Below the pieces are notes generated by a model. That model ran no database searches, was not told the DNA's origin, and saw nothing but the letters and a program-made list of their open reading frames with translations. From Macrostomum lignano (taxonomy: Eukaryota), in contig NIVC01000023.1 of the NCBI GenBank assembly GCA_002269645.1, positions 310,001-374,000 of the forward strand: DNA of 64,000 bases, given 5' to 3'. A program made the position numbers and the translations under genes. Shown here piece by piece: positions 2,491-64,000 of this stretch (position 1 is its first letter; every line of letters starts with the position of its first letter).

Positions 2491-3036
2491 TGATGCAATT
2501 GATCAGAACTCTGCCGTTAAACAGGAAATTTGACAACATTTTTCCCTATGAGCATTATTTGGTCGAACCTAGAAACTAAGATTAATCATTGCTCTGCTGT
2601 CATTTATAAAAGTTCTTTTTTGATAGCATGCATGATAGCATTTACTGTACTTAGCGATGCGAGCAGTTAAAAAATAAGGTTTCGAGTTTCAAGTTCATCT
2701 TATTCTTCCCTGCTTTTTGCACTTTGTTTTTCATTATATTTCATCCTATCATCTACGAGTCGTAACTACTTTTCTAAATTGAATTTTTAATTTTTCCTTA
2801 GACCTTCCTAACACTTTTTCCTAAATTCTTTCCGTTGTGTCTTAAACATCATATACGCTCGTACACCCAACTTTTATAGCCCATTGTGTCTTCTGAAATT
2901 TTTGCTGCCAAAGAACTTTACAATCGCCATGTAACGCTTCTCGATTATTTTGGCGATGCAATTTTCTTATTTTACTATTATCTTTCATGCCTGATTTTTT
3001 GTGTTGTATCTGCAGTGGTGCGCTATTGTACCGAGC

Positions 3037-4149
3037 CGTGTCTATAGTCTTCGTTGACTTCCGGAAGGCCTTCGACTCTGTCAGCAGGACGGCCTTAGCC
3101 TGGCTCCTGGCTCAGTACGGCGTCCCCGACACCCTGGTGACGGCAGTTATGGACCTGTACCACAACTCCAAGGCGTTTGTCGACTCCAGCGATGGCCCTA
3201 CGGACGAGTTTGATACCACTTCCGGGGTGCTGCAAGGGGACACGCTATCTCCCCTGCTTTTCATTCTGGCTGTTGACTACATCCTGCGCCGCTGCCTTCG
3301 AGACGACGACAGCTTTGTCCTCGCGCCTCAGCGTAGCTCCCGCCACACTGCCGTGACGCTCCCAGCCCTCGCCTACGCTGATGACATTGCGCTGCTGTGC
3401 CGAGACCCTGTAGCAGCCCAGCACGCTCTTACTCGACTCTCCGAGGAAGGCGCCCGGATCGGCTTGCAGATTAACGCAGGCAAGACGGAGGTGCTGCACG
3501 TGGGTGCTGACAATGCCCCACCGCTGACCCTGCCCAACGGCAAGGCCATTTCACTACCTAGGCACCCTCGTAATGAGCCCAGGGGCGATCATCGCGGACA
3601 GGAGGACTCAGGCCTGGCGCGCCATGCACCACCTCAGGCCGATCTTCACCTCCGGAGCGCGGGACGACCTGAAGATCCACCTGTTCCGCGCCGCTGTAGA
3701 ACCGATCCTTCTCTACGGCATGGAGGCTGTCCCGATGACAACCACGCGAGAACGGGCCCTGGATGCGATGCACCGCAACCTGCTGCGCAAGGCGCTGGGC
3801 GTGCGCTACCCGACCGTCCTCCCGACGGCCCAGCTGATGGCGAGATCGAAATCGCCGTCCCTCAGCGCCACCCTCCGCCGGCGCCGCCAGGCCCTGCTGG
3901 GACACTGCCTGCGGCGATTCGCCCGCGGCGACGACAACCCGCTTGGACTGGCCATTCTGCATCCGCTGACCGAACGGTTCCGCCGCGGCCAAGGGCGGAC
4001 CCAGACGCTCCGGGAGACACTTGTTGCCGACCTGGAGGCAATTGGACTGACCCCCCAGACTGCTGCGACCTGCCCTGCCCCTCTTTTTCGCAATCGTGTG
4101 CGTGCTAGTGCCCCCCGACCCTAGCGTCGTTGTAATGTAATGTAATGTA
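3037..4149 (+). mobile_element. 5'-truncated RTE-like LINE (reverse transcriptase), frameshifted
   Basis: RT motifs FVDFRKAFDSV, GVLQGDTLSPLLF, LAYADDIAL and GLQINAGKTE are present. A short deletion near 3548 shifts the frame into FHYLG...LLYGMEA. The element has a (TGTAA)n 3' tail and a 12-bp target-site duplication ATTGTACCGAGC at 3025-3036 and 4150-4161. Confidence 0.93.
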
Positions 4150-5809: not shown

Positions 5810-8800
5810 ATGAACTGGGGACGATTTCTCAAATTTCTGTTCGGCGCAGCCTGTCTTCTGGCGGCGGCTGCATTGACAATTTTTGTGCCCGTTATATTAC
5901 CTGTCAGCGTCCTCGTCTCTGGACTGATCGGTGCGGGCGTAGCTGCTCTCTACGGCGCTTGGAGGAATCTGGATTGGAAACAGTTCTGGAAGGAGGTTGG
6001 CGTAGGTGCCGCGATCGGTTTAGTCAGTGGTCTTTTTTCTATTGCTGCCTCTGCTGCCACTGCCAGTTTGACTCCTGCGTTGGAAGCATGGGGTATCAGC
6101 GCTTTTTTTACGAATGTATTGATACGGGGTGCAGCAGGTGCTATCACAGGTGCCATTGCTAACGCTGTTATAAATCTCGCGCGAGGCATGGCATGGCACG
6201 AAAACCTTCTTCGCGCTGTCTTCTCGTCTGCCCTCGCGGCTACCGTTCCTGTCGCGCTCGAACATCCAGAAATCGGACCGCGAATCCAGCAATTTATCAC
6301 TGATCGTCTTTCAAGCATTTTGCCAAATCCAATTGGCGGCACAGCTGCTGCAATCCACTGGTTAAGCTCAAGCGTCCCGGAACTCTTTTCTCACGCTGCG
6401 TCAAATATCGTTGGACAGCTGGCATTCATCAGGGGAATTGATCCAGCTCTTTTTGCTTGCTCAATGGCAGGCGGTTTGGCCATCACCGGAGTCCGGTACT
6501 TGCAAGACAGTATACAGCAGTCCTATGATTTGGTCCCAGAAAATGGCCAGGAACCAAATGTTCACACTGATCAACTTCTCTATTCGAAATTTGCTGGCAC
6601 AATCTCCTCAGCGCATCCGTCACCGCAACCCACTACGCCGGATAATCCGTCAAAGCTACCTCCTACGCCGGATAATCCGCCACCGCTACCTCCTACGCCA
6701 GGAAATCCATCAAAGCAACCTCCTACGCCAGATAATCCGCCAAAGCAACCTCCTACGCCGGATAATCCGCCACAGCAACCTCCTACGCCGGATAATCCGC
6801 CACCGCAACCCACTACGCCGGATAATCCGCCACCGCAACCCACTACGCCGGATAATCCGCCACCGCAACCCACTACGCCGGATAATCCGCCACCGCAACC
6901 CACTACGCCGGATAATCCGCCACCGCAGCCTCCTACGCCGGATAATCCGCCACCGCAACCTCCAACGCCGGATAATCCGTCACCGCAACCCACTACGCCG
7001 GATAATCCACCACCGCTACCTCCTACGCCGGATAATCCGCCACAGCAACCTCCTACGCCGGATAATCCGCCACAGCAACCTCCTACGCCGGATAATCCGC
7101 ATCCGCAACCCACTACGCCGGATAATCCGCCACCGCAACCCACTACGCCGGATAATCCGCATCCGCAACCCACTACGCCGGATAATCCGCCACCGCTACC
7201 TCCTACGCCGGATAATCCGCCACCGCTACCTCCTACGCCGGATAATCCGCCACCGCTACCTCCTACGCCGGAAAATCTACCCGAAGGAGTGATTTGTGGC
7301 ACGTTCTCACCGCCGCCTCCTCCACCGCCACCAGCCGCTGTGCATGTAAGAAGCCAGCAAGCTCAGCTAACTATCAAGAAAGAGACGGCGCCTCGCATAT
7401 TCAGTTCCACCATGGAGCTCTTACAGTACAAAGCGCAACGCAAACGAGAAGCGGACGAAGCCAAGCAGCTGGCGCACATGCCGTCGCCTAAAACATTCGA
7501 GACTGCCACTTCGAGGACAGCAAGTGATGCTGCCAACCGGAGCTCTGGAGCCATCGGGGGAGAATCACGAAATGCTGACTTGCAACCCTCTGGAATGAAC
7601 ACTGCTGACTCTGATAACAACGAGACAGGAAAGGACGAAAAGGACACACCTAAGCAGTTTCCAAATAATCAAGACAAAAAAGTTCATCAGCAAGTGAAGG
7701 CGTCAGTTGAAAATTTCTCAGTTGAGCAACCTACCGACTCCGCCACTTCGTTGAATTTGTGCAGAGTGGTCCCTCTGATTCTGTGGGACGAAAAGGATCA
7801 AAAGTACAAAATGGGAGATCCAGCTGAGTGGCAGCTGCCCCAAGGGCTCAAGGTGATTGCGGTCAGTGGGTCCATGCGGAGTGGAGCCACCACATTTATT
7901 CACGACCAGATTATGGACTTCGGCTATCAGTTCACGGAGAACCAGATCGCTGCCACCTTGTTCAAGGTCGGAGTGGTCATGTACGTATTGGAGAAGGAGA
8001 AAGTCGTGTTTCTGGACATTTGTGACAATATCGACAACATCAGCGGTGCTCTGGACAGCAGCGACTGCACAGAAGAGGAAAAACTCGAGCAAGGCTTCTG
8101 TCCAGCTGGAAACTTCTTGTTGGACCTCTTTGGCTTTGCTGCATCCACCCACTTTATCCTGCACTGCTCGATTGATCCAGAGCTTTTGGAAGTGGACTCT
8201 CAGAGTATCACAAAGCAGTTCATTTACGCCAAGATGAAATTTCTCGCGTGCAATGTTGACAAGTTTCTCCAACGCAGAGGTCCAGAACAGCTCAGCGTGG
8301 TGCTCCGCGCGAAGAAGAGTAAACTCATAGCGCTCTACGCAGACGTTTGGGATGAAACCATTCTGCTCAAATCCACTACGGTGGAATCGGACTCTAGCCA
8401 GGATGATGTCGGAGAAGACAAGAAGCTGATGCAGCTCTTTCCCGTCAGAAGGTTCTACCCGCTGAAGTATTATCCTGATCAAGGTGGGATCTCAATCCAA
8501 ATAAATGAGAAACTCTTAAGGCAGCGAGAGACAATCAAGGAGGCTATTCAGCAATCTAAAGCCCACTTGGCGTCATTTCCCAACGAATATCTGCCAGAAC
8601 TCACCGTCCACTGGCCGCAGGTCTGGCGCGAGCTGAGTGAGAACGAAGAGCTGCAAGCTACGCTACTCAAGTACGTCAACGAATGCGCAGTTAAACAAAA
8701 ACGAAAAAGTCCCGTAGAAGCCCGTTTATCGCAATTCCGCGAACTTGTAACGGAGCTCCAGAAGTATTCTGCAGAAAAATTTCCGCAACACGACCTACAC

Positions 8801-11056
8801 AGCAGGTTAAAAGAAGCGCAGGATTGGTGCCACGCGAAGACAGAAGAGTTTCAGCAGTCTGCCGAGGACATGCGAGATCCAACCACTCCGTTCCAATGCA
8901 TCCTCAAATTCGCGGAAGTCATCCTCAGGACGGGACTCAGCATCTCTAATCCCAGAGAGGTGGAACTGAAAAATCTCTGCTTAGAAACCAGTCTAAGAGG
9001 CTACACCGTTCTCATCTGGTGCGAGGATCCGATGCTGGAGTTCCTCTTTGCCAGATTAGCGATCAATGAATTCTCTGCTCTGAGCCTCCTCACTGACGAA
9101 GCCGTCTGCACAATGTTCGATGGTGCTTGGATGTTTTTAGCTCGAGCCGCCGACTTTGGCTACAAGCTGTCTCTGGCGCGACACGATGTGGTGGGCATCG
9201 CGATTAGCTGTCTGGCATCCAATCGATTTTTCCCAGAGTCCAGCAGGATGCGCTTCTACATACTGCTCACACTGAGGAATATGGTTGAGAATGATGTTAG
9301 ATTTCCCATGAGCACATACGCCAACGACTTTACTGGAAAATATCAACTTCCTCAGAGCGAGGTTAATTTTGAGAAACTCTTGTGCGAGGTGTCCTTCGAC
9401 GCCAAGGAGCTTGCTGAGAAGCTGGCGCTCAATGCCTTTGAACGCGCTGGTGAAACTGTATCTGAAGATGAATTCATCAAAAAATATAAAGAAGTGATTC
9501 AGAAAAAACTTCGATGCGACCCGGACCACCTAACGACGCAAGCAGTCAGAATGAAGAACACGGATGCTGACACTCAAAAGAGGTGGCAGCGAATCACGGA
9601 AGCCTTTTTCAATCGCCTCTTCTTCGAGATTGGAACGCGAACGGCGCGACAGATACTGGAGCTTCGAAATGACGAATCACCAAATGCCTATCAGATCTTC
9701 AGGGAGAAATTGTGTCGCAATGACCCGGACCCTGACTGTCTTCGGCAACAGGCTTGCATAATTCACTGCATGCTGCAACTCGAGGAGACAAAACTGTCAA
9801 AAATTATTATTAATATTCAGAAGCTCCGAGACTTCGTTGTCTACCAGTTGCGCAACTTTGTTGACCTACCCTCATACCGAGCTGTCCTTGGACTGGCGGC
9901 TCGGGCGATGCATGAGGAACACCGGATGAGAAATGAAGGTGAAAAACAACAGCAGCAACCAGAAGAGAAAGTTCAAGACATGAACACAATGCGCCGACAA
10001 GAGCAGCGACTGCTTGAGAAGCAACAGTTCGGAGAGCTTCAGCTTCTCCTTCTGCGCAACGACTGTCTTCAGCCGATTCTGGACACTTTGCTGAAACGCG
10101 CCATCAAGGACAGCGACACTCCAACAACCATATTCTCCCATGTTCTTACGGAGCTGCTGCTGAGCAGTGAAGAGGAAGAATATAAAAAGTTGTCTCTCGC
10201 GATATTTGCTCAGCAAATTGGAGGAGTTCGCGCTCACGCTATTGATCAGCTGTCCCGCTGCTTGCCGAGCGAAACAGAGACCAAGGAACCCTTTGCCGGA
10301 TGCTACCGCAGCGCGTCTGCCGCTCTCATGCTGTACAACAAGCTCAGCGCTGTCTACTTCCGGTGCTGCGACAGCGACGGCGATTTGTCACTCGAGTTTC
10401 TGCGGCTGTTCTACAAGAAGCTGAGCACCGAGGACAAGACCGAGTACGCAAAAGCAGCCATCAGCTCGGAAGCTGTCGAGACGGCAGTGAAACTGGTTCT
10501 CGACCCTAATAGGTTCACGGACCAAGACGGTGCTGAGCTGAAGTTCCAAACTCTGATTTTCCTATGGAATCTGCAGGTAAGGTTGGATAAACCAATTATT
10601 AACTTGTTAAAGTGAAGTAGCGATTAGTTCTGCTGAATATTTTTATTCTGATTTAGTGAATGACGCTTCAACTGACGTAAACTACGATTCCAGGAAACAT
10701 CCGGCCTCTCCCTGATCGACGCCAAGCGGAAGCATCTCGGCCAAAACATTGGCAGCCTATCCGACGTCAGGAATGTGAAACTCTACTGGCACAAGAGACA
10801 GGTGGCCGATGAGCGAGTCGGATTCTCCGAGGAGCAGGTTGCACGGCTACTCCTCTTCCTGGAGAGCAGCAGCGACACCGACAAGGTCGCCTCACTTCTT
10901 GAATTGAATCTCGCATTCAGATGGGGAGCGAAACACGCGAAGGATTTCCGTGAGCTGCAGGACGAGAGGCAGAAGCTGTGGAAAGAAGCCAAGGTTCGGT
11001 TCCAAGCAACGCAAGCCAGAAATGCTCGACTGCGACGTTTTGAAAGGAAAAATTGA
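5810..11056 (+). CDS. Large 2-exon protein (about 1709 aa): hydrophobic glycine-zipper N-terminus, Pro-rich repeat, degenerate GBP/atlastin-like (GB1/RHD3) GTPase domain, long helical C-terminal region
   Basis: Exon 1 is 5810-10576 (4767 nt open, donor CAG|GTAAGG). The phase-0 intron has a CTGAC branch-like site and a TTCCAG acceptor. Exon 2 is 10694-11056, in frame with the 10775 ORF, and ends in TGA. The GTPase-fold call comes from manual motif alignment only. Confidence 0.8.
6616..7276 (+). repeat. Coding 27-bp tandem repeat encoding P(T/P)TPDNPPPQ-type 9-mers, about 24 copies
   Basis: Unit ACGCCGGATAATCCGCCACCGCAACCC(T), in frame within the 5810 ORF. Confidence 0.95.
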
Positions 11057-11073: not shown

Positions 11074-11438
11074 TTTTATTTTTTTATTAGAGGCAGGGGG
11101 GTTGTGTGCACCCTGGCGCAATTTAAGCGTCATTGGCACACAACCGGCGAGAGGCATTACAGCCCATTCCGCCGACTCCCCTGAGCAGGCAAACAAGCGC
11201 GCGGATACGTTACGCAGGCACACACTCACACAGGAGTGTACAGCGGCCCTAACTTTATCAATTGTTAGGCATGTACACTTCACTGCGCCTTGGGGGGTTG
11301 GCTCTCAAGGCCGTTAATTGCACAAGCGAGCCAAGCCAAGATTCCAATCCAGCCCCAAATTAATGTGGCTGCACTTGGAATCGAGCCTGGGTCGCGGCAC
11401 ACCAGAGCAGCTGCGCTACCGCTGGGCTACGGCCCCCC
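11074..11438 (-). mobile_element. tRNA-derived SINE, family A, full length with TSD
   Basis: The minus strand begins GGGGGCCGTAGCCCAGCGG (A box) ... GGCTCGATTCC (B box) and ends in an A-rich tail. A 13-bp TSD GGAAGAAGCACTT lies at 11061-11073 and 11439-11451. A homologous copy is at 15945-16230. Confidence 0.85.
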
Positions 11439-12656
11439 GGAAGAAGCACTTACTTTATTTTACTTTTTTTGTTTGTTTTTTTACATGGTTTCATTAGGTA
11501 GGTTGGTTTAATCCATGGAATTGCTATGTTATTCAAGTTTCCTATAATCTTTCCTATGTCTGGTAATACGATAATTTTACTTAATGGGTGAAATTGAGGT
11601 GACTTAAACTATTCTGCTTTAACATTTTATAAAACCGATACATGGGGTGTTAACTCATTTCAGGATTGCAAACCGGTACAATCCCCACCTTTTAAAAAAC
11701 CTTATCGTCATCGGCAGGGTAGCGCACTTAGAGAGAACACTGTCAGAACCTGCTAATATTATAACCTGAAAGCTACATTGGTATAGATTGAACTTTTTTT
11801 CTTAGCCGATAGAATGCACATGAGAATGAGCTAATGCATTTGTTTGCATTAGGCCATAAAGTTCTTAACTCATCACACAGATACTCATTACTCATTACAC
11901 TAGACTGACTAAATATGTCACCGCAAATATAGTTGTCATGGGGAGTTGCTGAGATGCCATGACTCAATGGGGAGTTAGTATATATTCCTTATTTATATCA
12001 GTGCTAAGGCAAAAAAACTTGTCACTCGGTCAAAATGCGTGGCACGAAAGCATTTTTGCCATAGACACTTGGATAAATGGGGAATGTTTGATGTATCCAA
12101 CAGTTGCCATTTATTTGCACTCAGTCCAGTGCAGGGAGTTGGTCTATGGCCAGGCCCAATTTAAAGAACATTTTTCGCTGCTTGGTTCACCTATCTATGG
12201 GTGACTTCGGCCACGGCCACAATAAATAAAACAAGGGTATAAGTTATACTTAGTCGAGCGTATTTCTTTTTTCTATCCGATTATTTATTCAGTTTGAAAT
12301 ATTTATTCCTAACTGTAATTACTCTTAATAACGGTAAAAGTATTTTCCCATTGCTATAGTGGGTGCTTTTGCTGATATTAACGATTCCATATTTAGAAGG
12401 AAGGGATTAAACGTCGTAACTTTTGGTGTGTTTGTTTTTCGTAGCAACTGTATTTATTGACTGGTTTAGTATTCATTTAATTGCATTGCATATACGGCTT
12501 GAAACTTCGCTAATATAAAGAGAAATTTGCACAAGTTTGCAGATTCTATGATCCTACATGTATATCAGTATCTTTTACTCGAAGAGTAGAGTCATTTCAT
12601 CTTAGATCCGAGAATTCATTTTAATAAATATACCAAAAAGCATTGTAGCTCATTGG

Positions 12657-12860: not shown

Positions 12861-14047
12861 AAACTACTCTCAGTTCAGTAGTAAGTTAAACAGAAGCATT
12901 TATTGTATTTTTTAAAGCCAAGTCTCTTTTTATTGGCTCTTAATCCCTCAGCTTAAACCGTTCAACCGCGCCCCAATTTTTATTTGCCTTTCTCGGAATT
13001 CCAGCCTAAAGCGGCCATGTACATTCAGTGTACTGGCCAATGTACATTACTGCGGAACCAATTAGCAAGCTGTTTACGCCTGCAAGCTTGGGCTTCTAAA
13101 CTTATCAAAGTTATTTTAGCTGCCTTTATTCTTATAAAATGTATTCCCATTTGCTACTGAACTGAAAGTAGAAAGCTGTTTTACTAAGTATACATGCCTG
13201 AGTGGCCCATCCAGTTATTCTAGTATCTGTGCATCAGAGCATCACGCTGAACCACAAGGCAACGGCCCACGCCGCATTGCCCAAAGCTTATGACAAACTA
13301 TAACCCGTGTAATATGTGAAAACAACATTTTAATCCATTAAATCCATTCAAATTCTCCAATCCCAAGCTAAAATCTCACAAGAGTTTCTACCAGCGTACC
13401 TTAGACAATGCTTAATATTTCCGAGGTCGGATGGCTGTACGGAAATCATCGGACGCAAGAATTAAAACGTTTAAAACATCTGCCAAAGTTTGCGGTTTTT
13501 GTTCCTGATACGTTTTGACAATTAAAAAAACTATTGTTGTATTTATAATATGCCAAAATAGCAACCAGAAGTCATCTTAAGATTTTACATACATGTCGAA
13601 TTTCCTGTAACTAAATGAATTAGCGGAATGTATGTAGAAACAGTGGTTTCTGGGTACGTTAAAGACGTTAAGTACGTTAAAGATCCCAAGTGCCTAAAAG
13701 AAGAAATTCTTCTAAAATCATGCAAATACAGCTGCAGTCACTGTCAGTAAATAAGGGTAACTTTATAATTAATAATTACACAAATCAACACCCACGCAAC
13801 TCAGTCGCTGTGTCAAATCAATCGGTTGAAATAATTTGTGAACCAATGATAGCGGAAATATAAAATAGCTAAAAACCGATGCACTGCACCGATTGAAATA
13901 GATATTAAATTTACTTAACACGAATACGCAAAGTTCAGTGCACTGTACATAGCAGCTCTTATTAAATTTTATTGTCTTTCTGCACCCTAAAGTATAGACG
14001 TAAGTCTGGGTTTTGCTTTGGTCTTTGCAGACCCGCAGAAGCCTTCC

Positions 14048-15200
14048 ATGGGAGCTGTCCTTGAGGGGCGCTGTCCTTGAGGGGAGCTGTCCTTGAGGGG
14101 AGCTGTTCTTGAGGGGAGCTGGCCTTGAAGGGAGCTGTCCTTGAGGGGAGCTGTCCTTGAGGGGAGCTGTCCTTGAGGGGAGCTGTCCTTGAGGGGAGCT
14201 GTCCTTGAGGGGAGCTGGCCTTGAAGGGAGCTGTCCTTGAGGGGAGCTGTCCTTGAAGGGAGCTGTCCTTGAGGGGAGCTGTCCTTGAGGGGCGCTGTCC
14301 TTGAGGGGAGCTGTCCTTGAGGGGCGCTGTCCTTGAGGGGAGCTGTCCTTGAGGGGAGCTGTCCTTGAGGGGAGCTGTCCTTGAGGGGAGCTGTCCTTGA
14401 GGGGAGCTGTCCTTGAGGGGAGCTGTCCTTGAGGGGAGCTGGCCTTGAGGGGAGCTGTCCTTGAAGGGAGCTGTCCTTGAGGGAAGCTGTCCTTGAAGGG
14501 AGCTGTCCTTGAGGGGAGCTGTCCTTGAGGGGCGCTGTCCTTGAGGGGAGCTGTCCTTGAGGGAAGCTGTCTTTGATGGAGCTGTCCTTGAGGGGAGCTG
14601 TCCTTGAAGGGAGCTGTCCTTGAGGGGAGCTGTCCTTGAGGGGAGCTGTCCTTGAGGGGAGCTGTCCTTGAGGGGAGCTGGCCTTGAAGGGAGCTGTCCT
14701 TGAGGGGAGCTGTCCTTGAGGGGAGCTGTCCTTGAGGGGAGCTGTCCTTGGGGGAGCTGTCCTTGAAGGGAGCTGTCCTTGAGGGTAGCTGTCTTTGAGG
14801 GGAGCTGTCCTTGAGGGGAGCTGTCCTTGAGGGGAGCTGTCCTTGAGGGAAGCTGTCTTTGATGGAGCTGTCCTTGAGGGGAGCTGTCCTTGAAGGGAGC
14901 TGTCCTTGAGGGGAGCTGTCCTTGAGGGGAGCTGTCCTTGAGGGGAGCTGTCCTTGAGAGGAGCTGTCCTTGAGAGGAGCTGTCCTTGAGGGGAGCTGTC
15001 CTTGAGGGGAGCTGTCCTTGAGGGGAGCTGTCCTTGAGGGGAGCTGTCCTTGAGGGGAGCTGTCCTTGAGGGGAGCTGTCCTTGAGGGGAGCTGTCCTTG
15101 AGGGGAGCTGTCCTTGAGGGGAGCTGTCTTTGATGGAGTTTTCTTTGATGGAGCTGTCCTTGGGGGAGCTGTCTTTGAGGGCTGCTGTCTGTGAGGGGTG
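14048..15200. repeat. 16-bp minisatellite (GAGGGGAGCTGTCCTT)n, about 70 copies
   Basis: Directly visible tandem unit. It explains the spurious 426-aa and 438-aa ORFs. Confidence 0.95.
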
Positions 15201-15398
15201 CTGTCTGTGAGAGTTTAGTATTTCTGAACGATTCCCGATCAAGCAATAATTTACTTATTAGAAACTTCCATAGCATATCTTGAGCCATTTCTGGACACTT
15301 CATCTATGGACTATGTTGTACAGGTAGGTTTATAACAAGTGACCTAGTAAAATTTGATTCACATCAACGCTACAGCTCGAAATTCGCCAAGTGGATTA

Positions 15399-26900: not shown

Positions 26901-29900
26901 GAAATTCTAGGAGTAGTTTATGGGAAATTCTAGGGTTAGTTTATGGGAAATTATAGGGGTGGTTTATGGGAAATTCTAGGGGTGGTTTATGGGAAAGTTT
27001 TGGTCTCAGTGCATATCATGACATATCAAGTATACTTTTTGAATCTTGATCCTCAACTCTGAATGCCAAATGGTTCACTCAAAGCTAGACACTATTTAAT
27101 TTAAGTTCAGTATTTTCATTGGATGTCCCGACTTCTTTTAATTGTCAAATTTAAGTAATCTGTAAGCATGGAGTCTGCAGACTTCTGCAACTTCTGCAAA
27201 TTCAAAGGGTAGGGTAATTCTCACATTAAAAGGCTAGGGCTTTATTTGGCTTTTTTATAATTCTCATTTCAAACTTTTATATTTGATTATTTATGTCTGA
27301 ACATTAATCCTCCTTTCTCCAATCAATTTTTAGTGTTTACCTGCGACCAGCAATGTTGGAAGATGTTGTTAGCACCTGTACACCATTGGCCCTTGGGCTA
27401 ATTTGCTTCTCGTTAGGTAATTTTTATTACATAAATATACTGTGGAGTTAAAGTTGCAGCAATTTCCATGACTTTAAATGACCCTCAACCCCCCGGCGCG
27501 CTCAATGTTTGTGTCTGTTCTCAGCTCTCCTCTCTATTCTTTCTTCTCTCCTCTACTCTCTCATCTCTCATCCTCTCTCCATCTCCCCTCTCCTCTTATC
27601 TCATTTCTTCTCTTAAGCTCCTTCTCTCCTCTCCTCTCTTCTCTTATCTTCTCCCTCATCCCATCTCTCATCTAGCCTCTCACTTCTACTCTCTTCTGTT
27701 ATCTCTTTTCTTCATCTTTTTTCTTTTCTCTCCCCCATTTCCTCTCCTTCCCACTCTCATCTGGCCCTCAGCAATGATCTACTCTTAGATCCTGTATCTA
27801 ACTGGCTAACCTTCTACTAACATTTACCGTATTGCATTCCAGGCTACTTTGTACACGACTCAATTCACATGCTACGAAGAAAGGTTTCAACGGAAACTAT
27901 TGAACTACTATTTCACCATTTTATTGTAAGTTGGCAGACTTATTGCCGTGTCTTGAGTTGTGAATTCTAATTAGTCTGCACTTTTGCCCTTTGATCGGTA
28001 GCTCAATTATCACTATTTCAACTAGTGTGCTGCGTTCTTTTTAGTGGCGTGACTTTTTATAGCTCAATTTTGCAGTATTTCTCCGTTCTATGTAAGGGTG
28101 CAAAGGGTAGCTCTAAACTGGTTAATCTCGCTATTATATTGATAGGCGTAGTCGGCTGACTTTAGAATTTTTTTGGCTCTTTCTGCAACCCTGCCTTATC
28201 TTAGCTTGCAGTTTTCTTTGTGGACTTTTGACTTTATGAAAAATCATATATTGTATGACAAAAACTATGATAGAACTTTATAAACTGGGTTTGCATTGGT
28301 CGTATGCTAATGGGCTTAGGTACGCAGCAACACATTGAAGTATCAAACCCATGCTATGGATTTGGCAAATCCCAAACCCATCCTAAAATTGCTATGGAAC
28401 TTAATGAGTCTCGATGATGCATTATAAACTCACACTGAAGCATCATAAACCCACACTGAAGCATCATCAACCCACACTGAAGCATCATCAACCCACACTG
28501 AAGCATCATCAACCCACACTGAAGCATCATCAACCCATACTTAAGCATCATCAACCCACACTGAAGCATCATCAACCCTAACTGCAGCATCATCAACCCA
28601 CACTGAAGCATCATAAACCCTCACTGAAGCATCATCAACCGACACTGCAGCATCATCAACCGACACTGAAGCATCATTAACCGACACTGAAGCATCATAA
28701 ACCCACACTGAAGCATCATCAACCGACACTGCAGCATCATCAACCCACACTGAAGCATCATAAACCCACTCTGAAGCATCATCAACCGACACTGTAGCAT
28801 CATCAACCGACACTGAAGCATCATTAACCGACACTGAAGCATCATAAACCCACACTGAAGCATCATCAACCGACACTGCAGCATCATCAACCCATACTTA
28901 AGCATCATAAACCCTCACTGAAGCATCATCAACCCACACTGAAGCATCTTTAACCCACACTGAAGCATCCCAAACCCACACTGAAGCATCATTAACCCAC
29001 ACTAAAACATCATTAACCCACACTGAAGCATCATAAACCCACTCTGAAGCATCATAAACCCACACTGAAGCATCATAAACCCACTCTGAAGCATCCCAAA
29101 CCCTCACTGAAGCATCATAAACCCACACTGAAGCATCCCAAACCCACACTGAAGCATCATTAACCCACACTAAAGCATCATTAACCCACACTGAAGCATC
29201 ATCAACCCATACTTAAGCATCATAAACCCACACTGAAGCATCATCAACCCACACTGAAGCATCATCAACCCATACTTGAGCATCATAAACCCACACTGAA
29301 GCATCATCAACCGACACTGCAGCATCATCAACCCATACTTAAGCATCATAAACCCTCACTGAAGCATCATCAACCCACACTGAAGCATCATCAACCCATA
29401 CTTAAGCATCATAAACCCTCACTGAAGCATCATCAACCGACACTGCAGCATCATCAACCCATACTTAAGCATCATAAACCCTCACTGAAGCATCATCAAC
29501 CGACACTGAAGCATCATAAACCCACACTGAAGCATCATAAACCCACTCTGAAGCATCATAAACCCTCACTGAAGCATCATCAACCCACTCTGAAGCATCC
29601 CAAACCCACTCTGAAGCATCATAAACCCACACTGAAGCATCCCAAACCCACACTGAAGCATCCCAAACCCACACTGAAGCATCATTAACCCACACTAAAG
29701 CATCATTAACCCACACTGAAGCATCATAAACCCACTCTGAAGCACCATAAACCCACACTGAAGCATCATAAACCCACTCTGAAGCATCCCAAACCCACTC
29801 TGAAGCATCATAAACCCACACTGAAGCATCCCAAACCCACACTGAAGCATCCCAAACCCACACTGAACCATCATTAACCCACACTGAAGCATCATTAACC

Positions 29901-32554
29901 CACACTAAAGCATCATTAACCCACACTGAAGCATCATCAACCCATACTTAAGCATCATAAACCCACACTGAAGCATCATCAACCCACACTGAAGCATCAT
30001 CAACCCATACTTGAGCATCATAAACCCACACTGAAGCATCATCAACCGACACTGCAGCATCATCAACCCATACTTAAGCATCATAAACCCTCACTGAAGC
30101 ATCATCAACCCACACTGAAGCATCATCAACCCATACTTAAGCATCATAAACCCTCACTGAAGCATCATCAACCGACACTGCAGCATCATCAACCCATACT
30201 TAAGCATCATAAACCCTCACTGAAGCATCATCAACCGACACTGAAGCATCATAAACCCACACTGAAGCATCATAAACCCACTCTGAAGCATCATAAACCC
30301 TCACTGAAGCATCATCAACCCACTCTGAAGCATCCCAAACCCACTCTGAAGCATCATAAACCCACACTGAAGCATCCCAAACCCACACTGAAGCATCCCA
30401 AACCCACACTGAAGCATCATTAACCCACACTAAAGCATCATTAACCCACACTGAAGCATCATAAACCCACTCTGAAGCACCATAAACCCACACTGAAGCA
30501 TCATAAACCCACTCTGAAGCATCCCAAACCCACTCTGAAGCATCATAAACCCACACTGAAGCATCCCAAACCCACACTGAAGCATCCCAAACCCACACTG
30601 AACCATCATTAACCCACACTAAACCATCATTAACCCACACTGAAGCATCATAAACGTGTCAAAATAATCGTAAACCAATTGTACTTTATCTACGCTAAAT
30701 GTACTTTAAAAATTAGACAAGTATAGGCCACTGAAGCTTTTTATTTTAACAAATATTTATAATATTTTATAACCTCAATAATCTATAAAACAATAGATTG
30801 GAACGGTACAAAAAGGTGAGTAAAAATCATAATTAAAACAGTTCACTTATTCGTTGCACTATAGAAACGACAATTGGTTTCATTTTTTGTTTATCTATTT
30901 TCTGTGCGCCCTCGGAAATATTTTATTATTCAAGATGAACAAACTTATCGCCAGTAAAACTTTGAATTTATTAAAATATGGCAACTTTCTTCATCTTTTT
31001 ATGAGCTACTAAAAGTAGCACCAATTATTGCAACTATTTTTAAAATTGATAGAACTTGATGATAAATTCTCAGAGAATAGACAGCCAAATCTTTTCTGTT
31101 CTGAAATTGCAATAAGTTTTACGAGACAGTAGCACCACCTAAGAGACAGAGGCGCCACCACCTAAGAGACAGAATTGGGCTTTAGAAAGTTGCAGTTTTG
31201 ACAAGTTATCAGTAAAATTGTCAATAAAATAATTTCTTGGTTGCTCTTTTTACAGTTTGAAAAGTACTCGTATTAAAATGTTTTGTCAATGAAAAATCAA
31301 ATCATAATTTTAGATTTTTATCACCTACGGTCTGGCTGTTGTTCAGAGGACCTACGTCGCCTTCGCCGTGGTGTCCCTATTCATGGAGGTCAATTCGATA
31401 TTTCTGCATGCCAGACAGCTGGCTAATTTGCGAAGAGCAAATCGAAGTTCGATTGTTTATCGGTTTCTATGCGCGGCTAATGTTGGTGAGTTTTTTGAAA
31501 CTGAACACGTCCTTAGTGGTCGCTTGGCCTTTGGCGCCTGTCTTTAGCGCCGACTTGACCCCATTTGGCGCTTGTCTTTAGCGCCAACTTGACTCCATTT
31601 GGCGCCTGTCTTTAGCGCCGACTTGACCCCATTTAGCGCTTGTCTTTAGCGTCACTTCAACCCCATTTGGCGCCTGTCTTTAGCGCCACCTTGACCCCAT
31701 TTGGCGCCTGTCTTTAGCGCCACCTTAACCCAATTTGACGCCCGTCTTTAGCGCCAACTTGACTCCATTTGGCGCCTGTCTTTAGCGCCAACTTGACCCT
31801 TATTTAGCGCTTGTCTTTAGCGCCACCTTAACTCCATTTGGTGTCTGTCTTTAGTTCCACCTCAACCCCATTTGGCGCCTGTCTTTAGCGCCACCTTAAC
31901 CCTATTTAGCGCCTGTCTTTAGCGCCACCTTAACTCCATTTGGCGCCTGTCTTTAGCGCCACCTTAACCCCAATTGGCGCCTGTCTTTAGCGTCACCTCA
32001 ACCCCATTTGGCGCCCGTCTTTATCACCAACTTGACTCCATTTGGCGCCTGTTTTTTAGCGTCAACTCAACCCATTTGGCGCTTGTCTTTAGCGCCAACT
32101 TGACCCCATTTAACGCCTTTTTTAGCGCCACCTTAACCCCATGCTTCAATTCCAACTTTGGCGCCTCAATTCCAACTTTGGCGCCTCAATTCCAACTTTG
32201 GCGCCTCAATTCCAACTTTGGTGCCTTAATTTCAAAGTTGGTGTCTAAATTCTATTTTTGGCGCCTATTCCTGCCCTAATTTGGCGCTATCAGGCTCAGA
32301 TGTCGCGTCAGTTGCTAACTCAGTTAATTCTGGCACACTGCGCAGGCACTCTAGTGACATTTCGCGGCATCACCACAGCCTGGATGGTTCGTTGGATTTG
32401 GTCAAATTGGCGCCTACTGCCGCTTCCAGTGGCTCTGCTAGGCGCCTCCGGTCTGGTTGTCATCAGCGTTATGAACATCGTCCTGCTGGTCCGCCTTGTC
32501 AAAGCAGACTATTTCACTAATATTAGTAATAGCCAGAAAGCCAAAGCGTCCTAG
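23926..32554 (+). CDS. TLC (TRAM/LAG1/CLN8) domain membrane protein, TLCD1/TLCD2-like, 5 exons, 303 aa
   Basis: Exons 23926-24290, 27334-27416, 27843-27925, 31314-31485 and 32346-32554 are all GT-AG and phase-consistent (912 nt). Motifs: WKMQNIFLSEIHSIVSG, GYFVHD, ELLFHHF, LFMEVNSIFLHAR, TLVTFR, MNIVLLVRLVKAD. Confidence 0.9.
25040..25195. repeat. Short compound tandem repeat built on GGCAGACAAATA and CTGGCCATTTGCCCAG subunits (about 49-bp period)
   Basis: About three visible units in TLCD intron 1. Confidence 0.7.
26270..27000. repeat. 23-bp minisatellite (GGCAGTTCTAGGGGTAGTTTATT)n, about 30 copies
   Basis: Visible tandem unit that diverges towards the 3' end. Confidence 0.92.
27520..27760. 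repeat. CT-rich low-complexity tract
   Basis: Degenerate (CT/CTT)n between TLCD exons 2 and 3. Confidence 0.8.
28405..30655. repeat. 21-bp satellite (CTGAAGCATCAT(C/A)AACCCACA)n, over 100 copies, with a 735-bp higher-order duplication
   Basis: Visible unit. Variant patterns and the spurious ORFs recur at an offset of exactly 735 bp (29191/29926, 29465/30200). Confidence 0.95.
31510..32225. repeat. 34-bp minisatellite (TGGCGCCTGTCTTTAGCGCCACCTTGACCCCATT)n followed by 20-bp units (TCAATTCCAACTTTGGCGCC)n
   Basis: Visible units in TLCD intron 4. Each 34-mer contains a TGGCGC...GCGCCA inverted pair. Confidence 0.9.

Positions 32555-36643: not shown

Positions 36644-64000
<27,357 letters not shown>

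What the first reader, a model, noticed from the sequence alone, without database searches (positions are those of the whole stretch)
7760..8320. Catalytically dead GBP/atlastin-like GTPase fold inside a 1709-aa protein
Seen in sequence: VVPLIL...KVIAVSGSMRSGATTFI...FKVGVVMY...VVFLDICD...LFGFAASTHFILH...LSVVLR. Established: this order and spacing mirrors guanylate-binding proteins (PMCLI...VVAIVGLYRTGKS...HTKGIWMW...LVLLDTEG...LAVLLSSTFVYN...FVWTLRD). Here the P-loop Lys is Ala (GSMRSGAT, 7868-7891), G3 DxxG is DICD, and G4 RD is RA. Inference: a pseudo-GTPase of the GB1/RHD3 family followed by about 850 aa of helical sequence, possibly an immunity-related or membrane-remodelling scaffold.
Basis: partly seen in the sequence, partly recalled or inferred. 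Interest (0 to 1): 0.7.

Follow-up and report, generated by a model that had tools for sequence, protein, structure and literature searches.

The report
Conserved pseudo-GTPase domain in flatworm protein
A 1709-residue protein of the flatworm Macrostomum lignano contains a conserved, selectively maintained domain that looks like the GTP-binding domain of GBP/atlastin-type proteins but lacks every residue needed to hydrolyse GTP. The same holds in its few relatives in nematodes and in metagenome fragments, so it defines an unannotated family of probable membrane-anchored pseudo-GTPases.

Summary
All quoted motifs are at the stated coordinates, and the two-exon gene (5810-10576 plus 10694-11056) encodes exactly 1709 aa. 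The organism is Macrostomum lignano or a very close relative.

The domain (aa ~646-905) has no Pfam or PDB sequence match. A full HMMER scan found distant relatives in three nematode genera, a Glomeromycota fungus and metagenomes. This domain is the most conserved part of the family.

The motif degeneracy is family-wide, not a private loss:
- Walker A is GxxxSG-R-T in every non-flatworm member, and Ala or Thr in M. lignano.
- G3 is Dx[CA][DE].
- G4 keeps the Arg but has no conserved Asp.

dN/dS against a paralogue is 0.12 in the domain and 0.97 in the linker.

Low-confidence AlphaFold models give a GTPase strand order. Their best PDB matches are GBP1/GBP5 (window protein) and SMG9/GBP5 (nematode relative).

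Verdict: a G-domain-like pseudoenzyme is well supported. Its GBP/atlastin/SMG8-9 affiliation is plausible but not proven, and its function is inferred only.

The parts
5810..10576 (+). Exon 1 of the gene (aa 1-1589)
   Evidence: ORF list and translation. The GT donor follows CAG at 10574-10576.
10577..10693 (+). Intron (GTAAGG...TTCCAG). Reading through it gives the false ORF end VRLDKPIINLLK*.
   Evidence: Paralogue proteins continue FLWNLQ|ETSGLSLID. The same intron (117 nt) is present in paralogue locus L001.
10694..11056 (+). Exon 2 (aa 1590-1709, basic helical tail ...ARLRRFERKN) plus the stop TGA at 11054-11056
   Evidence: The tail aligns with the end of P0013.
5810..6514 (+). N-terminal Gly/Ala-rich hydrophobic domain (aa 1-235). 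Kyte-Doolittle peaks at aa 4-50, 62-87 and 103-121. Probable multi-pass, glycine-zipper-like membrane anchor.
   Evidence: Hydropathy profile and alignment with the N-termini of P0006, P0007 and P0011. Pfam gives only a weak Gly-zipper_YMGG hit, E 0.85.
6615..7277 (+). 22 copies of a 30-bp tandem repeat encoding PTPDNPPPQP, followed by a polyproline run. Variable spacer.
   Evidence: TRF. The paralogue L001 has a different 2.7-kb linker at this place.
7745..8524 (+). G-domain-like pseudo-GTPase domain (aa 646-905)
   Evidence: Best-conserved stretch in all distant relatives. AF2 DSSP order: b0 hairpin, b1, P-loop, a1, b2/b3 hairpin, a2, b4, a3, b5, a4. Foldseek. dN/dS 0.12 for aa 646-837.
7868..7891 (+). 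Degenerate Walker A / G1: GSMRSGAT. Ala693 takes the place of the Lys.
   Evidence: Paralogues have GSMRSGTT. Relatives have GxxxSGRT. The family profile aligns this segment to the GSGKT P-loops of PDB proteins.
7961..8026 (+). b2-turn-b3 hairpin ending in a degenerate Walker B / G3: FKVGVVMYVLEKEKVVFLDICD (DICD in place of DxxG)
   Evidence: Two strands joined by a 4-residue turn, directly before the Asp.
8126..8164 (+). a2/b4 segment LFGFAASTHFILH. The His is invariant in the family (the family motif is LLELFxYxxxDH).
8291..8308 (+). b5 strand LSVVLR. The Arg sits where GBP/atlastin have the RD of G4, and the Asp is absent (RA).
   Evidence: The family motif is [VL]LR followed by a variable residue.
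8426..8476 (+). LMQLFPVRRFYPLKYYP. It resembles by eye the GBP1 segment LCIRKFFPKKKCFVFDRP and atlastin-1 CFTNISCFLLPHPG (the b6 region).
   Evidence: Seen in the sequence and in family alignment columns FPLxY. hhalign did not align this part.
8525..10576 (+). C-terminal region of about 685 aa, predicted mostly helical. It is shared with the nematode relatives, with Gigaspora P0012 and with the unnamed metagenome protein P0013.
   Evidence: phmmer stretches. DSSP helices for aa 838-1000 at low confidence. The remainder was not modelled.

Best explanation
The stretch 7745-8524 encodes a conserved pseudo-GTPase. It is a large G domain of the TRAFAC class, most similar to the dynamin-like GBP/atlastin/SMG8-9 group. 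It has lost the Walker-A Lys, the switch-I Thr, the G3 Gly and the G4 Asp.

The degenerate state is ancestral to a small, unannotated family found in Macrostomum, three nematode genera, Glomeromycota and metagenomes. The domain is kept under purifying selection.

Inferred mechanism:
- The protein is held in a membrane by its N-terminal glycine-zipper-like hydrophobic domain.
- A long, variable proline-rich spacer projects the G-like domain and its helical stalk away from the membrane.
- The G-like domain works as a nucleotide-independent interaction or dimerisation module, as the nucleotide-free G-like domain of SMG8 does, and not as an enzyme.
- In Plectus the same chassis ends in a UBX domain, which suggests that it recruits p97/CDC-48.

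Shown here: the gene model, the motifs, the family, its conservation and the selection on it.
Inferred: the fold subtype, the absence of nucleotide turnover, the membrane anchoring and the scaffold role.
For: - Gene model and motif coordinates.
- Distant relatives with the same domain order. The G-like domain is their best-conserved stretch.
- Family-wide motifs are GxxxSG-R-T[TM], hhhhDx[CA][DE] and [VL]LR. No member has GK[ST].
- A family profile searched against PDB hits only Walker-A segments, with the Arg aligned on the Lys.
- AF2 secondary-structure order equals that of a GTPase, with an N-terminal b-hairpin extension and a b2/b3 hairpin before the Walker-B Asp.
- Foldseek against PDB, window model: GBP1 (2b8w, 2d4h; E 8e-4, prob 0.99) and GBP5 are ranks 1-4 of 350,542 chains. 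SMG8-SMG9 and Sey1p follow.
- Foldseek against PDB, M. belari model: SMG9 (E 6e-4) and GBP5.
- The M. belari model's viral-library hits are mostly giant-virus G proteins.
- The SMG8/9 G domains are described as atlastin/GBP1-like, with SMG8 nucleotide-free (PMC5473137).
Controls Ras, EF-Tu and Adk score 18-20.5 on the P-loop only.
- dN/dS against paralogue L001: 0.12 in the domain, 0.97 in the linker, 0.30 in the helical part.
- N-terminal hydrophobic domain conserved in relatives.
- UBX in P0011.
Against: - No Pfam, NCBIfam or PDB sequence hit.
- hhalign probability is at most 13%. Nothing remains once b0, the P-loop and a1 are removed (score 14.4; 39 of 150 shuffles reach it). The GBP-specific sequence signal is therefore thin.
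- The AF2 models come from a 4-row alignment and are of low confidence (mean pLDDT 46 and 55). TM-scores are 0.33-0.39.
- The first non-G-domain Foldseek hit has an E-value only about 5 times worse.
- The two models do not agree on the single best family (GBP1 versus SMG9).
- An Arg at the Walker-A Lys position might still allow nucleotide binding in the nematode members.
- Membrane insertion, dimerisation and any cellular role are untested.
Confidence: 0.55

Rival explanations
1. It is a G-domain-like pseudo-NTPase of the TRAFAC class, but it is an independent lineage or is closer to another branch (SMG9-like, septin/AIG1-like). It is not a derivative of GBP/atlastin, and the GBP resemblance is generic to large G domains.
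For: - The M. belari model matches SMG9 best, followed by G-alpha, Arl2 and Hbs1.
- The M. belari model's BFVD hits are Ran, AIG1 and Ras proteins.
- No GBP-specific sequence signal remains outside the P-loop segment.
- The GBP-type P-loop Arg is not conserved in the family.
Against: - GBP1 and GBP5 are ranks 1-4 for the window model.
- hhalign extends over 109 columns with GBP1+ATL1, but over only 14-23 columns with Ras, EF-Tu and Adk.
- The N-terminal b-hairpin, the domain size (G4 position at +146 here, +138 in GBP1) and the conserved Arg at the RD position all fit GBP/atlastin.
Confidence: 0.27
2. The domain still binds, and perhaps slowly turns over, a nucleotide in a non-canonical way. 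Arg would substitute for Lys in most members. It would then be a slow switch and not a dead scaffold. The M. lignano copies (Ala/Thr) would be a further-degenerate offshoot.
For: - The rest of the P-loop (GxxxSG-x-T[TM]) and the Walker-B Asp are strictly conserved.
- Selection on the domain is strong.
- From general knowledge, Walker-A K-to-R mutants of some P-loop proteins keep nucleotide binding while losing hydrolysis.
Against: - M. lignano has Ala or Thr at this position and still shows dN/dS 0.12. The conserved function there cannot depend on that side chain.
- The switch-I Thr, the G3 Gly and the G4 Asp are missing in every member.
Confidence: 0.1
3. It is an NLR-like STAND protein. An N-terminal membrane-damaging effector domain is followed by a central ASCE-type NTPase switch and a C-terminal helical sensor.
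For: - The tripartite layout, the patchy distribution (flatworm, nematodes, Glomeromycota), the multiple paralogues and the hypervariable linker.
- A weak nSTAND_NTPase5 hit on the P-loop of P0011 (E 0.02, 31 residues).
Against: - The Walker-B Asp lies only 49 residues after the P-loop Gly, directly behind a tight b-hairpin. That is the GTPase pattern, not the ASCE pattern.
- No STAND, AAA or repeat family hit reaches threshold.
- Foldseek returns G domains, not NACHT or NB-ARC.
- The N-terminal domain is strongly hydrophobic over more than 100 residues, like a constitutive anchor.
Confidence: 0.05
4. There is no P-loop fold at all. The motif series is a chance resemblance in an alpha/beta domain of another kind.
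For: - There is no significant database match.
- The models are of low confidence.
- Alpha/beta hydrolases and Rossmann-type enzymes appear among the weaker Foldseek hits.
Against: - The strand-GxxxSGxT-helix and hhhhD motifs are conserved across relatives that are 23-36% identical.
- The profile hits in PDB all fall on Walker-A segments.
- hhalign scores far above the shuffles.
- G-domain proteins dominate the high-probability Foldseek hits in three searches.
Confidence: 0.03

Closest known systems
Guanylate-binding proteins (hGBP1, GBP5), large GTPase (LG) domain plus helical domain
   Same: - The order and spacing of b0, P-loop, b2, b3-Asp, a2/b4, b5-Arg and the FP motif are the same.
- There is an N-terminal b-hairpin before the P-loop strand.
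- The G domain is of 'large' size.
- An Arg sits at the RD position.
- M. lignano has an Arg at the GBP1 R48 position.
- A helical region follows.
- GBP1 and GBP5 are the best Foldseek PDB hits for the window model.
   Different: - There is no significant sequence-profile match.
- Lys51 is replaced by Ala, there is no equivalent of Thr75, DxxG reads DICD, and RD reads RA.
- The helical part is about 870 aa, against about 300 in GBP1.
- The protein has an N-terminal membrane domain and a proline-rich spacer instead of a C-terminal CaaX box.
- GBPs are cooperative GTPases. This domain cannot use that chemistry.
Atlastin / Sey1p-RHD3 (membrane-anchored dynamin-like fusion GTPases)
   Same: - A membrane-anchored protein with a GBP-type large G domain and a helical stalk.
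- Sey1p (5ca8) is among the Foldseek hits.
- Adding atlastin-1 to the GBP1 profile raises the hhalign score to 30.2.
   Different: - The anchor is N-terminal and far from the G domain, not C-terminal to the stalk.
- All G motifs are degenerate, so GTP-driven tethering or fusion is excluded.
- Atlastin-1 alone aligns only on the P-loop.
SMG8 / SMG9 G domains of the SMG1 kinase complex
   Same: - They are dynamin-like (atlastin/GBP1-like) G domains.
- SMG8 lacks the G motifs, binds no nucleotide and serves as a constitutive dimerisation partner (PMC5473137). That is the working model proposed here.
- SMG9 is the best Foldseek hit of the M. belari relative, and 5nkm is a hit of the window model.
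   Different: - There is no sequence similarity.
- SMG8 and SMG9 are soluble NMD factors that bind SMG1.
- SMG9 keeps its Lys/Ser P-loop.
- The domain architecture is entirely different.

Membership tests
GBP/atlastin (GB1/RHD3-type G domain, Pfam GBP PF02263) | Significant match to the family profile | tested here: not met
   No Pfam hit at E<=10 for the protein, for the domain or for any of 7 family members. hhalign against GBP1 gives probability 5-7%, and against GBP1+ATL1 12.8%.
GBP/atlastin (GB1/RHD3-type G domain, Pfam GBP PF02263) | G1 P-loop GxxxxGK[ST] | tested here: not met
   GSMRSGAT here, GSMRSGTT in paralogues and GxxxSGRT in the other relatives.
GBP/atlastin (GB1/RHD3-type G domain, Pfam GBP PF02263) | Internal arginine finger in the P-loop (GBP1 Arg48; PMC5084822) | tested here: inconclusive
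   R690 sits at that position in M. lignano. The relatives have G, K or A there, so it is not a family feature.
GBP/atlastin (GB1/RHD3-type G domain, Pfam GBP PF02263) | G2 switch-I Thr and G3 DxxG | tested here: not met
   No conserved Thr precedes b2. G3 reads DICD here, and Dx[CA][DE] in the family.
GBP/atlastin (GB1/RHD3-type G domain, Pfam GBP PF02263) | G4 'RD' in place of N/TKxD (PMC5084822) | tested here: not met
   The Arg is conserved at the end of b5 ([VL]LR). The next residue is A, G, Y or P, and there is no conserved Asp.
GBP/atlastin (GB1/RHD3-type G domain, Pfam GBP PF02263) | LG-domain fold with an N-terminal b-hairpin extension, followed by a helical domain | tested here: inconclusive
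   GBP1 and GBP5 are the top Foldseek hits (E 8e-4, prob 0.99). However, TM is 0.33-0.39 and the model pLDDT is 46. The relative's model prefers SMG9.
TRAFAC-class P-loop GTPase fold | b1, P-loop, a1, then an antiparallel b2/b3 hairpin with the Walker-B Asp at the end of b3 | tested here: met
   The DSSP order is the same in two models. A 4-residue turn lies between the strands, and the Asp is at +49 from the P-loop Gly. The profile aligns to Walker-A segments in PDB. Caveat: the models are of low confidence.
PseudoGTPase (G-domain fold without the residues for binding or hydrolysis) | Loss of catalytic G motifs, conserved under selection | tested here: met
   Motifs. dN/dS is 0.12 in the domain.
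PseudoGTPase (G-domain fold without the residues for binding or hydrolysis) | No nucleotide hydrolysis or binding in vitro | not testable with these tools
   This needs recombinant protein.
STAND / NLR NTPases | ASCE-type NTPase (Walker A Lys, hhhhD[DE], helix between the Walker strands) with a winged-helix module | tested here: not met
   The only hit is a 31-residue P-loop match to nSTAND_NTPase5, E 0.02, in P0011. The hairpin topology and the Foldseek hits argue against this family.
SMG8/SMG9 family | Sequence match to SMG8/SMG9 and an NMD-complex context | tested here: not met
   No Pfam or PDB sequence hit. The only resemblance is at fold level.

The most novel reading that the evidence does not exclude
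This is the founding description of a previously unrecognised family. Its members are membrane-anchored, nucleotide-dead, dynamin-like (GBP/atlastin-type) proteins.
- The Walker-A Arg is ancestral to the family.
- The distribution is patchy: a flatworm, several nematodes, arbuscular-mycorrhizal fungi and metagenomes.
- Accessory modules are lineage-specific: a UBX domain in Plectus, a CAE...PCxxC deaminase-like insert in Mesorhabditis, and hypervariable proline repeats in Macrostomum.

The family would act as a nucleotide-independent membrane tether or adaptor, or as an innate-immunity or conflict effector.
Probability: 0.3. Interest if true: 0.7.

Novelty: new variant of a known kind. Interest (0 to 1): 0.55.

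Why it matters
GBPs and atlastins are the textbook cases of GTP-driven membrane attack and membrane fusion. A conserved relative that keeps the G-domain shell, a stalk and a membrane anchor, but has none of the catalytic residues, would show what this scaffold can do without nucleotide turnover. The only comparable case found here is SMG8.

It would also put a function-bearing label on a set of 'hypothetical proteins' in Macrostomum lignano, a regeneration and stem-cell model with RNAi and transgenesis, and in nematodes. The domain is clearly maintained by selection, so there is a real function to find.

Tried and rejected
- Pfam, NCBIfam and PDB sequence searches of the protein, its parts and its relatives gave nothing significant.
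- The word-indexed homologue search found only M. lignano paralogues. With the family alignment it returned nothing. A long concatenated query timed out. A shorter one returned only P0006.
- As a result, the AF2 alignments could hold only M. lignano sequences plus P0006. The other nematode sequences came from a tool whose output is not accepted by structure prediction, and I did not submit them.
- hhalign after deleting b0, the P-loop and a1 left no residual similarity to GBP1/ATL1.
- Atlastin-1 alone, Ras, EF-Tu and adenylate kinase align only on the P-loop.
- The viral contig scan found no relatives.
- No second copy lies in the window, and there are no tRNAs.
- The deaminase-like insert of P0006 has no Pfam match.
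- The downstream gene in the M. belari locus showed no detectable continuation of the family.
- A literature search for Macrostomum plus guanylate-binding found nothing relevant.
- The idea that the P-loop Arg (GxxRxG) marks GBP ancestry was rejected, because it is absent in all the other relatives.
Full report
**1. What is in the sequence**

The window is eukaryotic. It is very rich in tandem repeats and carries a reverse-transcriptase fragment and laminin-G/EGF exons.

The finding lies in a long ORF (5810-10615, 1601 aa). Its closest database relatives are five Macrostomum lignano proteins at 58-92% identity. These proteins continue past ...FLWNLQ with ETSGLSLID....

That continuation is encoded 117 nt downstream, behind a GTAAGG...TTCCAG intron.

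All quoted motifs are present once each, in frame, at the stated positions. GSMRSGAT is exactly at 7868-7891.

**2. Architecture**

- aa 1-235: a Gly/Ala-rich, strongly hydrophobic domain with Kyte-Doolittle peaks at aa 4-50, 62-87 and 103-121.
- aa ~270-490: 22 tandem copies of PTPDNPPPQP, from a 30-bp DNA repeat at 6615-7277, followed by a polyproline run.
- aa ~500-645: a charged linker.
- aa ~646-905: the candidate G domain.
- aa ~905-1589: a region predicted to be mostly helical.
- aa 1590-1709: a 120-aa basic tail from exon 2.

Pfam, NCBIfam and PDB sequence searches find nothing significant in any part.

**3. The family**

A full HMMER scan of 1.84 billion representative proteins found nine more relatives. 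Their sources are given:

- Mesorhabditis belari (P0006)
- Plectus sambesii (P0007, P0011)
- Pristionchus entomophagus (P0008)
- Gigaspora margarita (P0012, helical part only)
- Four metagenome fragments

The long members share the layout: an N-terminal hydrophobic domain (aligned), a disordered linker, the conserved domain and a large helical region. P0011 ends in a UBX domain (21.7 bits, cutoff 21).

The stretch aa 641-795 of the window protein is the best-matching part in four of the relatives (P0007-P0010).

**4. The motifs across the family**

- A hydrophobic strand hhPhIh[YW].
- A W-P motif.
- The strand K[VIL][VI]x[VF]xG running into GxxxSG-R-T[TM].
- IHS..GYxL..Q.
- hG[VIL]xMYV[LF], then a 4-5 residue turn, then hhhhDx[CA][DE].
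- LLELFxYxxxDH.
- h[ST]hhLR.
- FPLxY.

Every member outside M. lignano has Arg where a Walker-A Lys should be. M. lignano has Ala in the window and in P0003, and Thr in P0001 and P0002. No member has DxxG or a conserved Asp after the Arg of 'LR'.

The GBP-like Arg inside the P-loop (R690, GxxRxG) is confined to M. lignano, so it is not evidence of GBP ancestry.

**5. Selection**

The paralogue locus L001 (NIVC01000023.1) is 95% identical in DNA from 7280 to the stop codon. It also has the N-terminal domain, but a different 2.7-kb linker. Nei-Gojobori dN/dS against it:

| Region | dN/dS |
|---|---|
| Whole aligned region (aa 492-1709) | 0.40 |
| Linker (aa 492-645) | 0.97 |
| G-like core (aa 646-837) | 0.12 (5.5 non-synonymous, 11.5 synonymous changes) |
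| Helical part | 0.30 |

The counts are small. Even so, the domain without its Lys is the most constrained part of the protein.

**6. Fold**

A profile of the family searched against PDB sequences hits only Walker-A segments (gluconate kinase, DEAH helicases, ABC proteins; E >= 0.18). In each hit the family Arg is aligned to the Lys.

The AlphaFold2 alignments could hold only M. lignano sequences plus P0006 (see section 10). The models are therefore weak:

- Window aa 641-1000: mean pLDDT 46, core 50-70.
- P0006 domain: mean pLDDT 55, pTM 0.57.

Both models give the same order of elements: a three-stranded N-terminal b-meander, b1, P-loop, a1, a short helix, a b2/b3 hairpin, a2, b4, a3, b5, a4. 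Two strands joined by a four-residue turn directly before the Walker-B Asp (+49 from the P-loop Gly) are the GTPase (TRAFAC) pattern. They do not fit the kinase or ASCE pattern.

Foldseek results:

- Window model against 350,542 PDB chains: ranks 1-4 are the hGBP1 LG domain (2b8w, 2d4h; E 7.7e-4, prob 0.99, TM 0.33-0.39) and GBP5. Full-length GBP1, SMG8-SMG9 and Sey1p follow.
- P0006 model against PDB: SMG9 (6syt_C, E 6.4e-4), then GBP5, SMG8-SMG9, G-alpha, Arl2 and Hbs1.
- P0006 model against BFVD: giant-virus Ran, AIG1 and Ras proteins.

SMG8 and SMG9 are themselves described as atlastin/GBP1-like G domains. SMG8 lacks the G motifs and binds no nucleotide (PMC5473137).

The searches therefore converge on G domains, and on the dynamin-like large G group in particular. 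The caveat is that the first unrelated hit has an E-value only about five times worse.

**7. Profile comparison with GBP and atlastin**

Both proved 100% identical to PDB chains.

| Family profile compared with | Columns aligned | Score | Probability | P |
|---|---|---|---|---|
| GBP1 | 52-83 | 26-27 | 5-7% | 0.005-0.008 |
| GBP1 + ATL1 | 109 | 30.2 | 12.8% | 0.0023 |
| Ras, EF-Tu, adenylate kinase | 14-23 (P-loop only) | 18-20.5 | - | - |

A column-shuffle null gives 14.2 +/- 2.4, with a maximum of 24.6 and 0 of 300 shuffles reaching the real score.

After deleting b0, the P-loop and a1 from both sides, nothing remains: score 14.4, reached by 39 of 150 shuffles. The sequence signal beyond a generic P-loop is therefore real but small, and it is confined to the N-terminal third of the domain.

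**8. Interpretation**

Well supported: a conserved, selected, G-domain-like P-loop domain that lacks the canonical residues for GTP binding and hydrolysis. In short, a pseudo-GTPase.

Moderately supported: it belongs structurally with the GBP/atlastin/SMG8-9 large G domains. The grounds are:

- the top Foldseek hits;
- the N-terminal b-extension;
- the domain size;
- an Arg at the position where GBPs and atlastins have RD (PMC5084822);
- an FP...Y motif that resembles the b6 region of GBP1 and atlastin by eye.

Formal membership of the GB1/RHD3 family is not shown. The profile match and four of the sequence-defined features fail.

Function is inferred. I propose an N-terminal membrane anchor, a long proline-rich spacer, and a nucleotide-independent G-like interaction module on a helical stalk, by analogy with SMG8. 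The UBX end in Plectus points to p97 recruitment.

An immunity or conflict role is possible but untested. The hints are the patchy distribution, the paralogues, the hypervariable linker and a CAE...PCxxC insert in P0006.

**9. Rivals**

- An independent or other-branch G-domain lineage (0.27).
- A non-canonical nucleotide binder that uses Arg (0.10).
- An NLR-like STAND protein (0.05).
- No P-loop fold at all (0.03).

**10. Limits**

The homologue search with an alignment returned nothing, and a long query timed out. Only P0006 could be added to the AF2 alignments. The other relatives came from a tool whose output structure prediction does not accept, so I did not submit them. A deep-alignment model and HHpred remain the decisive computations.

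Noticed in passing
window 6615-7277: A 30-bp tandem repeat, 22 copies at 91% match, lies inside the coding sequence and encodes PTPDNPPPQP decapeptides followed by a polyproline run. The paralogue locus L001 has a different 2.7-kb sequence between the N-terminal domain and the polyproline run, so the spacer is hypervariable.
   Followed up: partly
window 10577-10693: A 117-nt GT..AG intron. Reading through it gives the false C-terminus VRLDKPIINLLK*. One database protein (P0002) carries the same read-through end.
   Followed up: yes
window 2987-4108 (+): An ORF with a reverse-transcriptase domain (RVT_1, E 2e-18). It is a retroelement fragment (non-LTR type by eye) just upstream of the gene.
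   Followed up: partly
window 48432-57412 (-): ORFs with laminin-G and EGF domains (Laminin_G_2 E 4e-21). They are probably exons of an extracellular-matrix or adhesion gene on the minus strand.
   Followed up: no
window 13962-15303, 28415-30655, 36982-38463, 39973-41189, 42064-43321 and others: There are 27 strong tandem arrays in 64 kb, for example 21 bp x 107, 16 bp x 72 and CTAT x 266. Several create long spurious ORFs and the strong GC-skew swings in the composition profile.
   Followed up: partly
P0006 (Mesorhabditis belari), aa ~330-470; locus L002: Between the N-terminal hydrophobic domain and the G-like domain, this relative carries GCAEP...(43 aa)...PPCDSC. This is the zinc-binding signature of nucleic-acid/cytidine deaminases. 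Pfam finds no match.
   Followed up: partly
P0011 (Plectus sambesii), aa 2113-2180: A C-terminal UBX domain (21.7 bits, cutoff 21). P0007 ends in a similar sequence. The M. lignano protein has no UBX and ends in a basic tail ...ARLRRFERKN, which is shared with the metagenome protein P0013 (...ARLKRFSNNQ).
   Followed up: partly
window ~7358-7444 (aa ~517-545): The charged helix-like segment IFSSTMELLQYKAQRKREADEAKQL has look-alikes about 100 residues upstream of the G-like domain in the nematode relatives (for example VIDEIRFINEEKQRADRERERQ and ISDEIRYERKLRQKLKEMEEKE). This was seen by eye only.
   Followed up: no
window 11280-11450: A GC-rich segment just after the stop codon has tRNA-like or SINE-like strings (for example GGAATCGAGCCTGGGTCGCGG). 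ARAGORN finds no tRNA gene there.
   Followed up: partly
tool behaviour: the search for homologous proteins returned no hit for an alignment that contained M. lignano sequences it had found earlier. It returned only P0006 for a concatenated query containing segments of five family members. The other four (P0007, P0008, P0009, P0011) seem not to be reachable through its word index.
   Followed up: no
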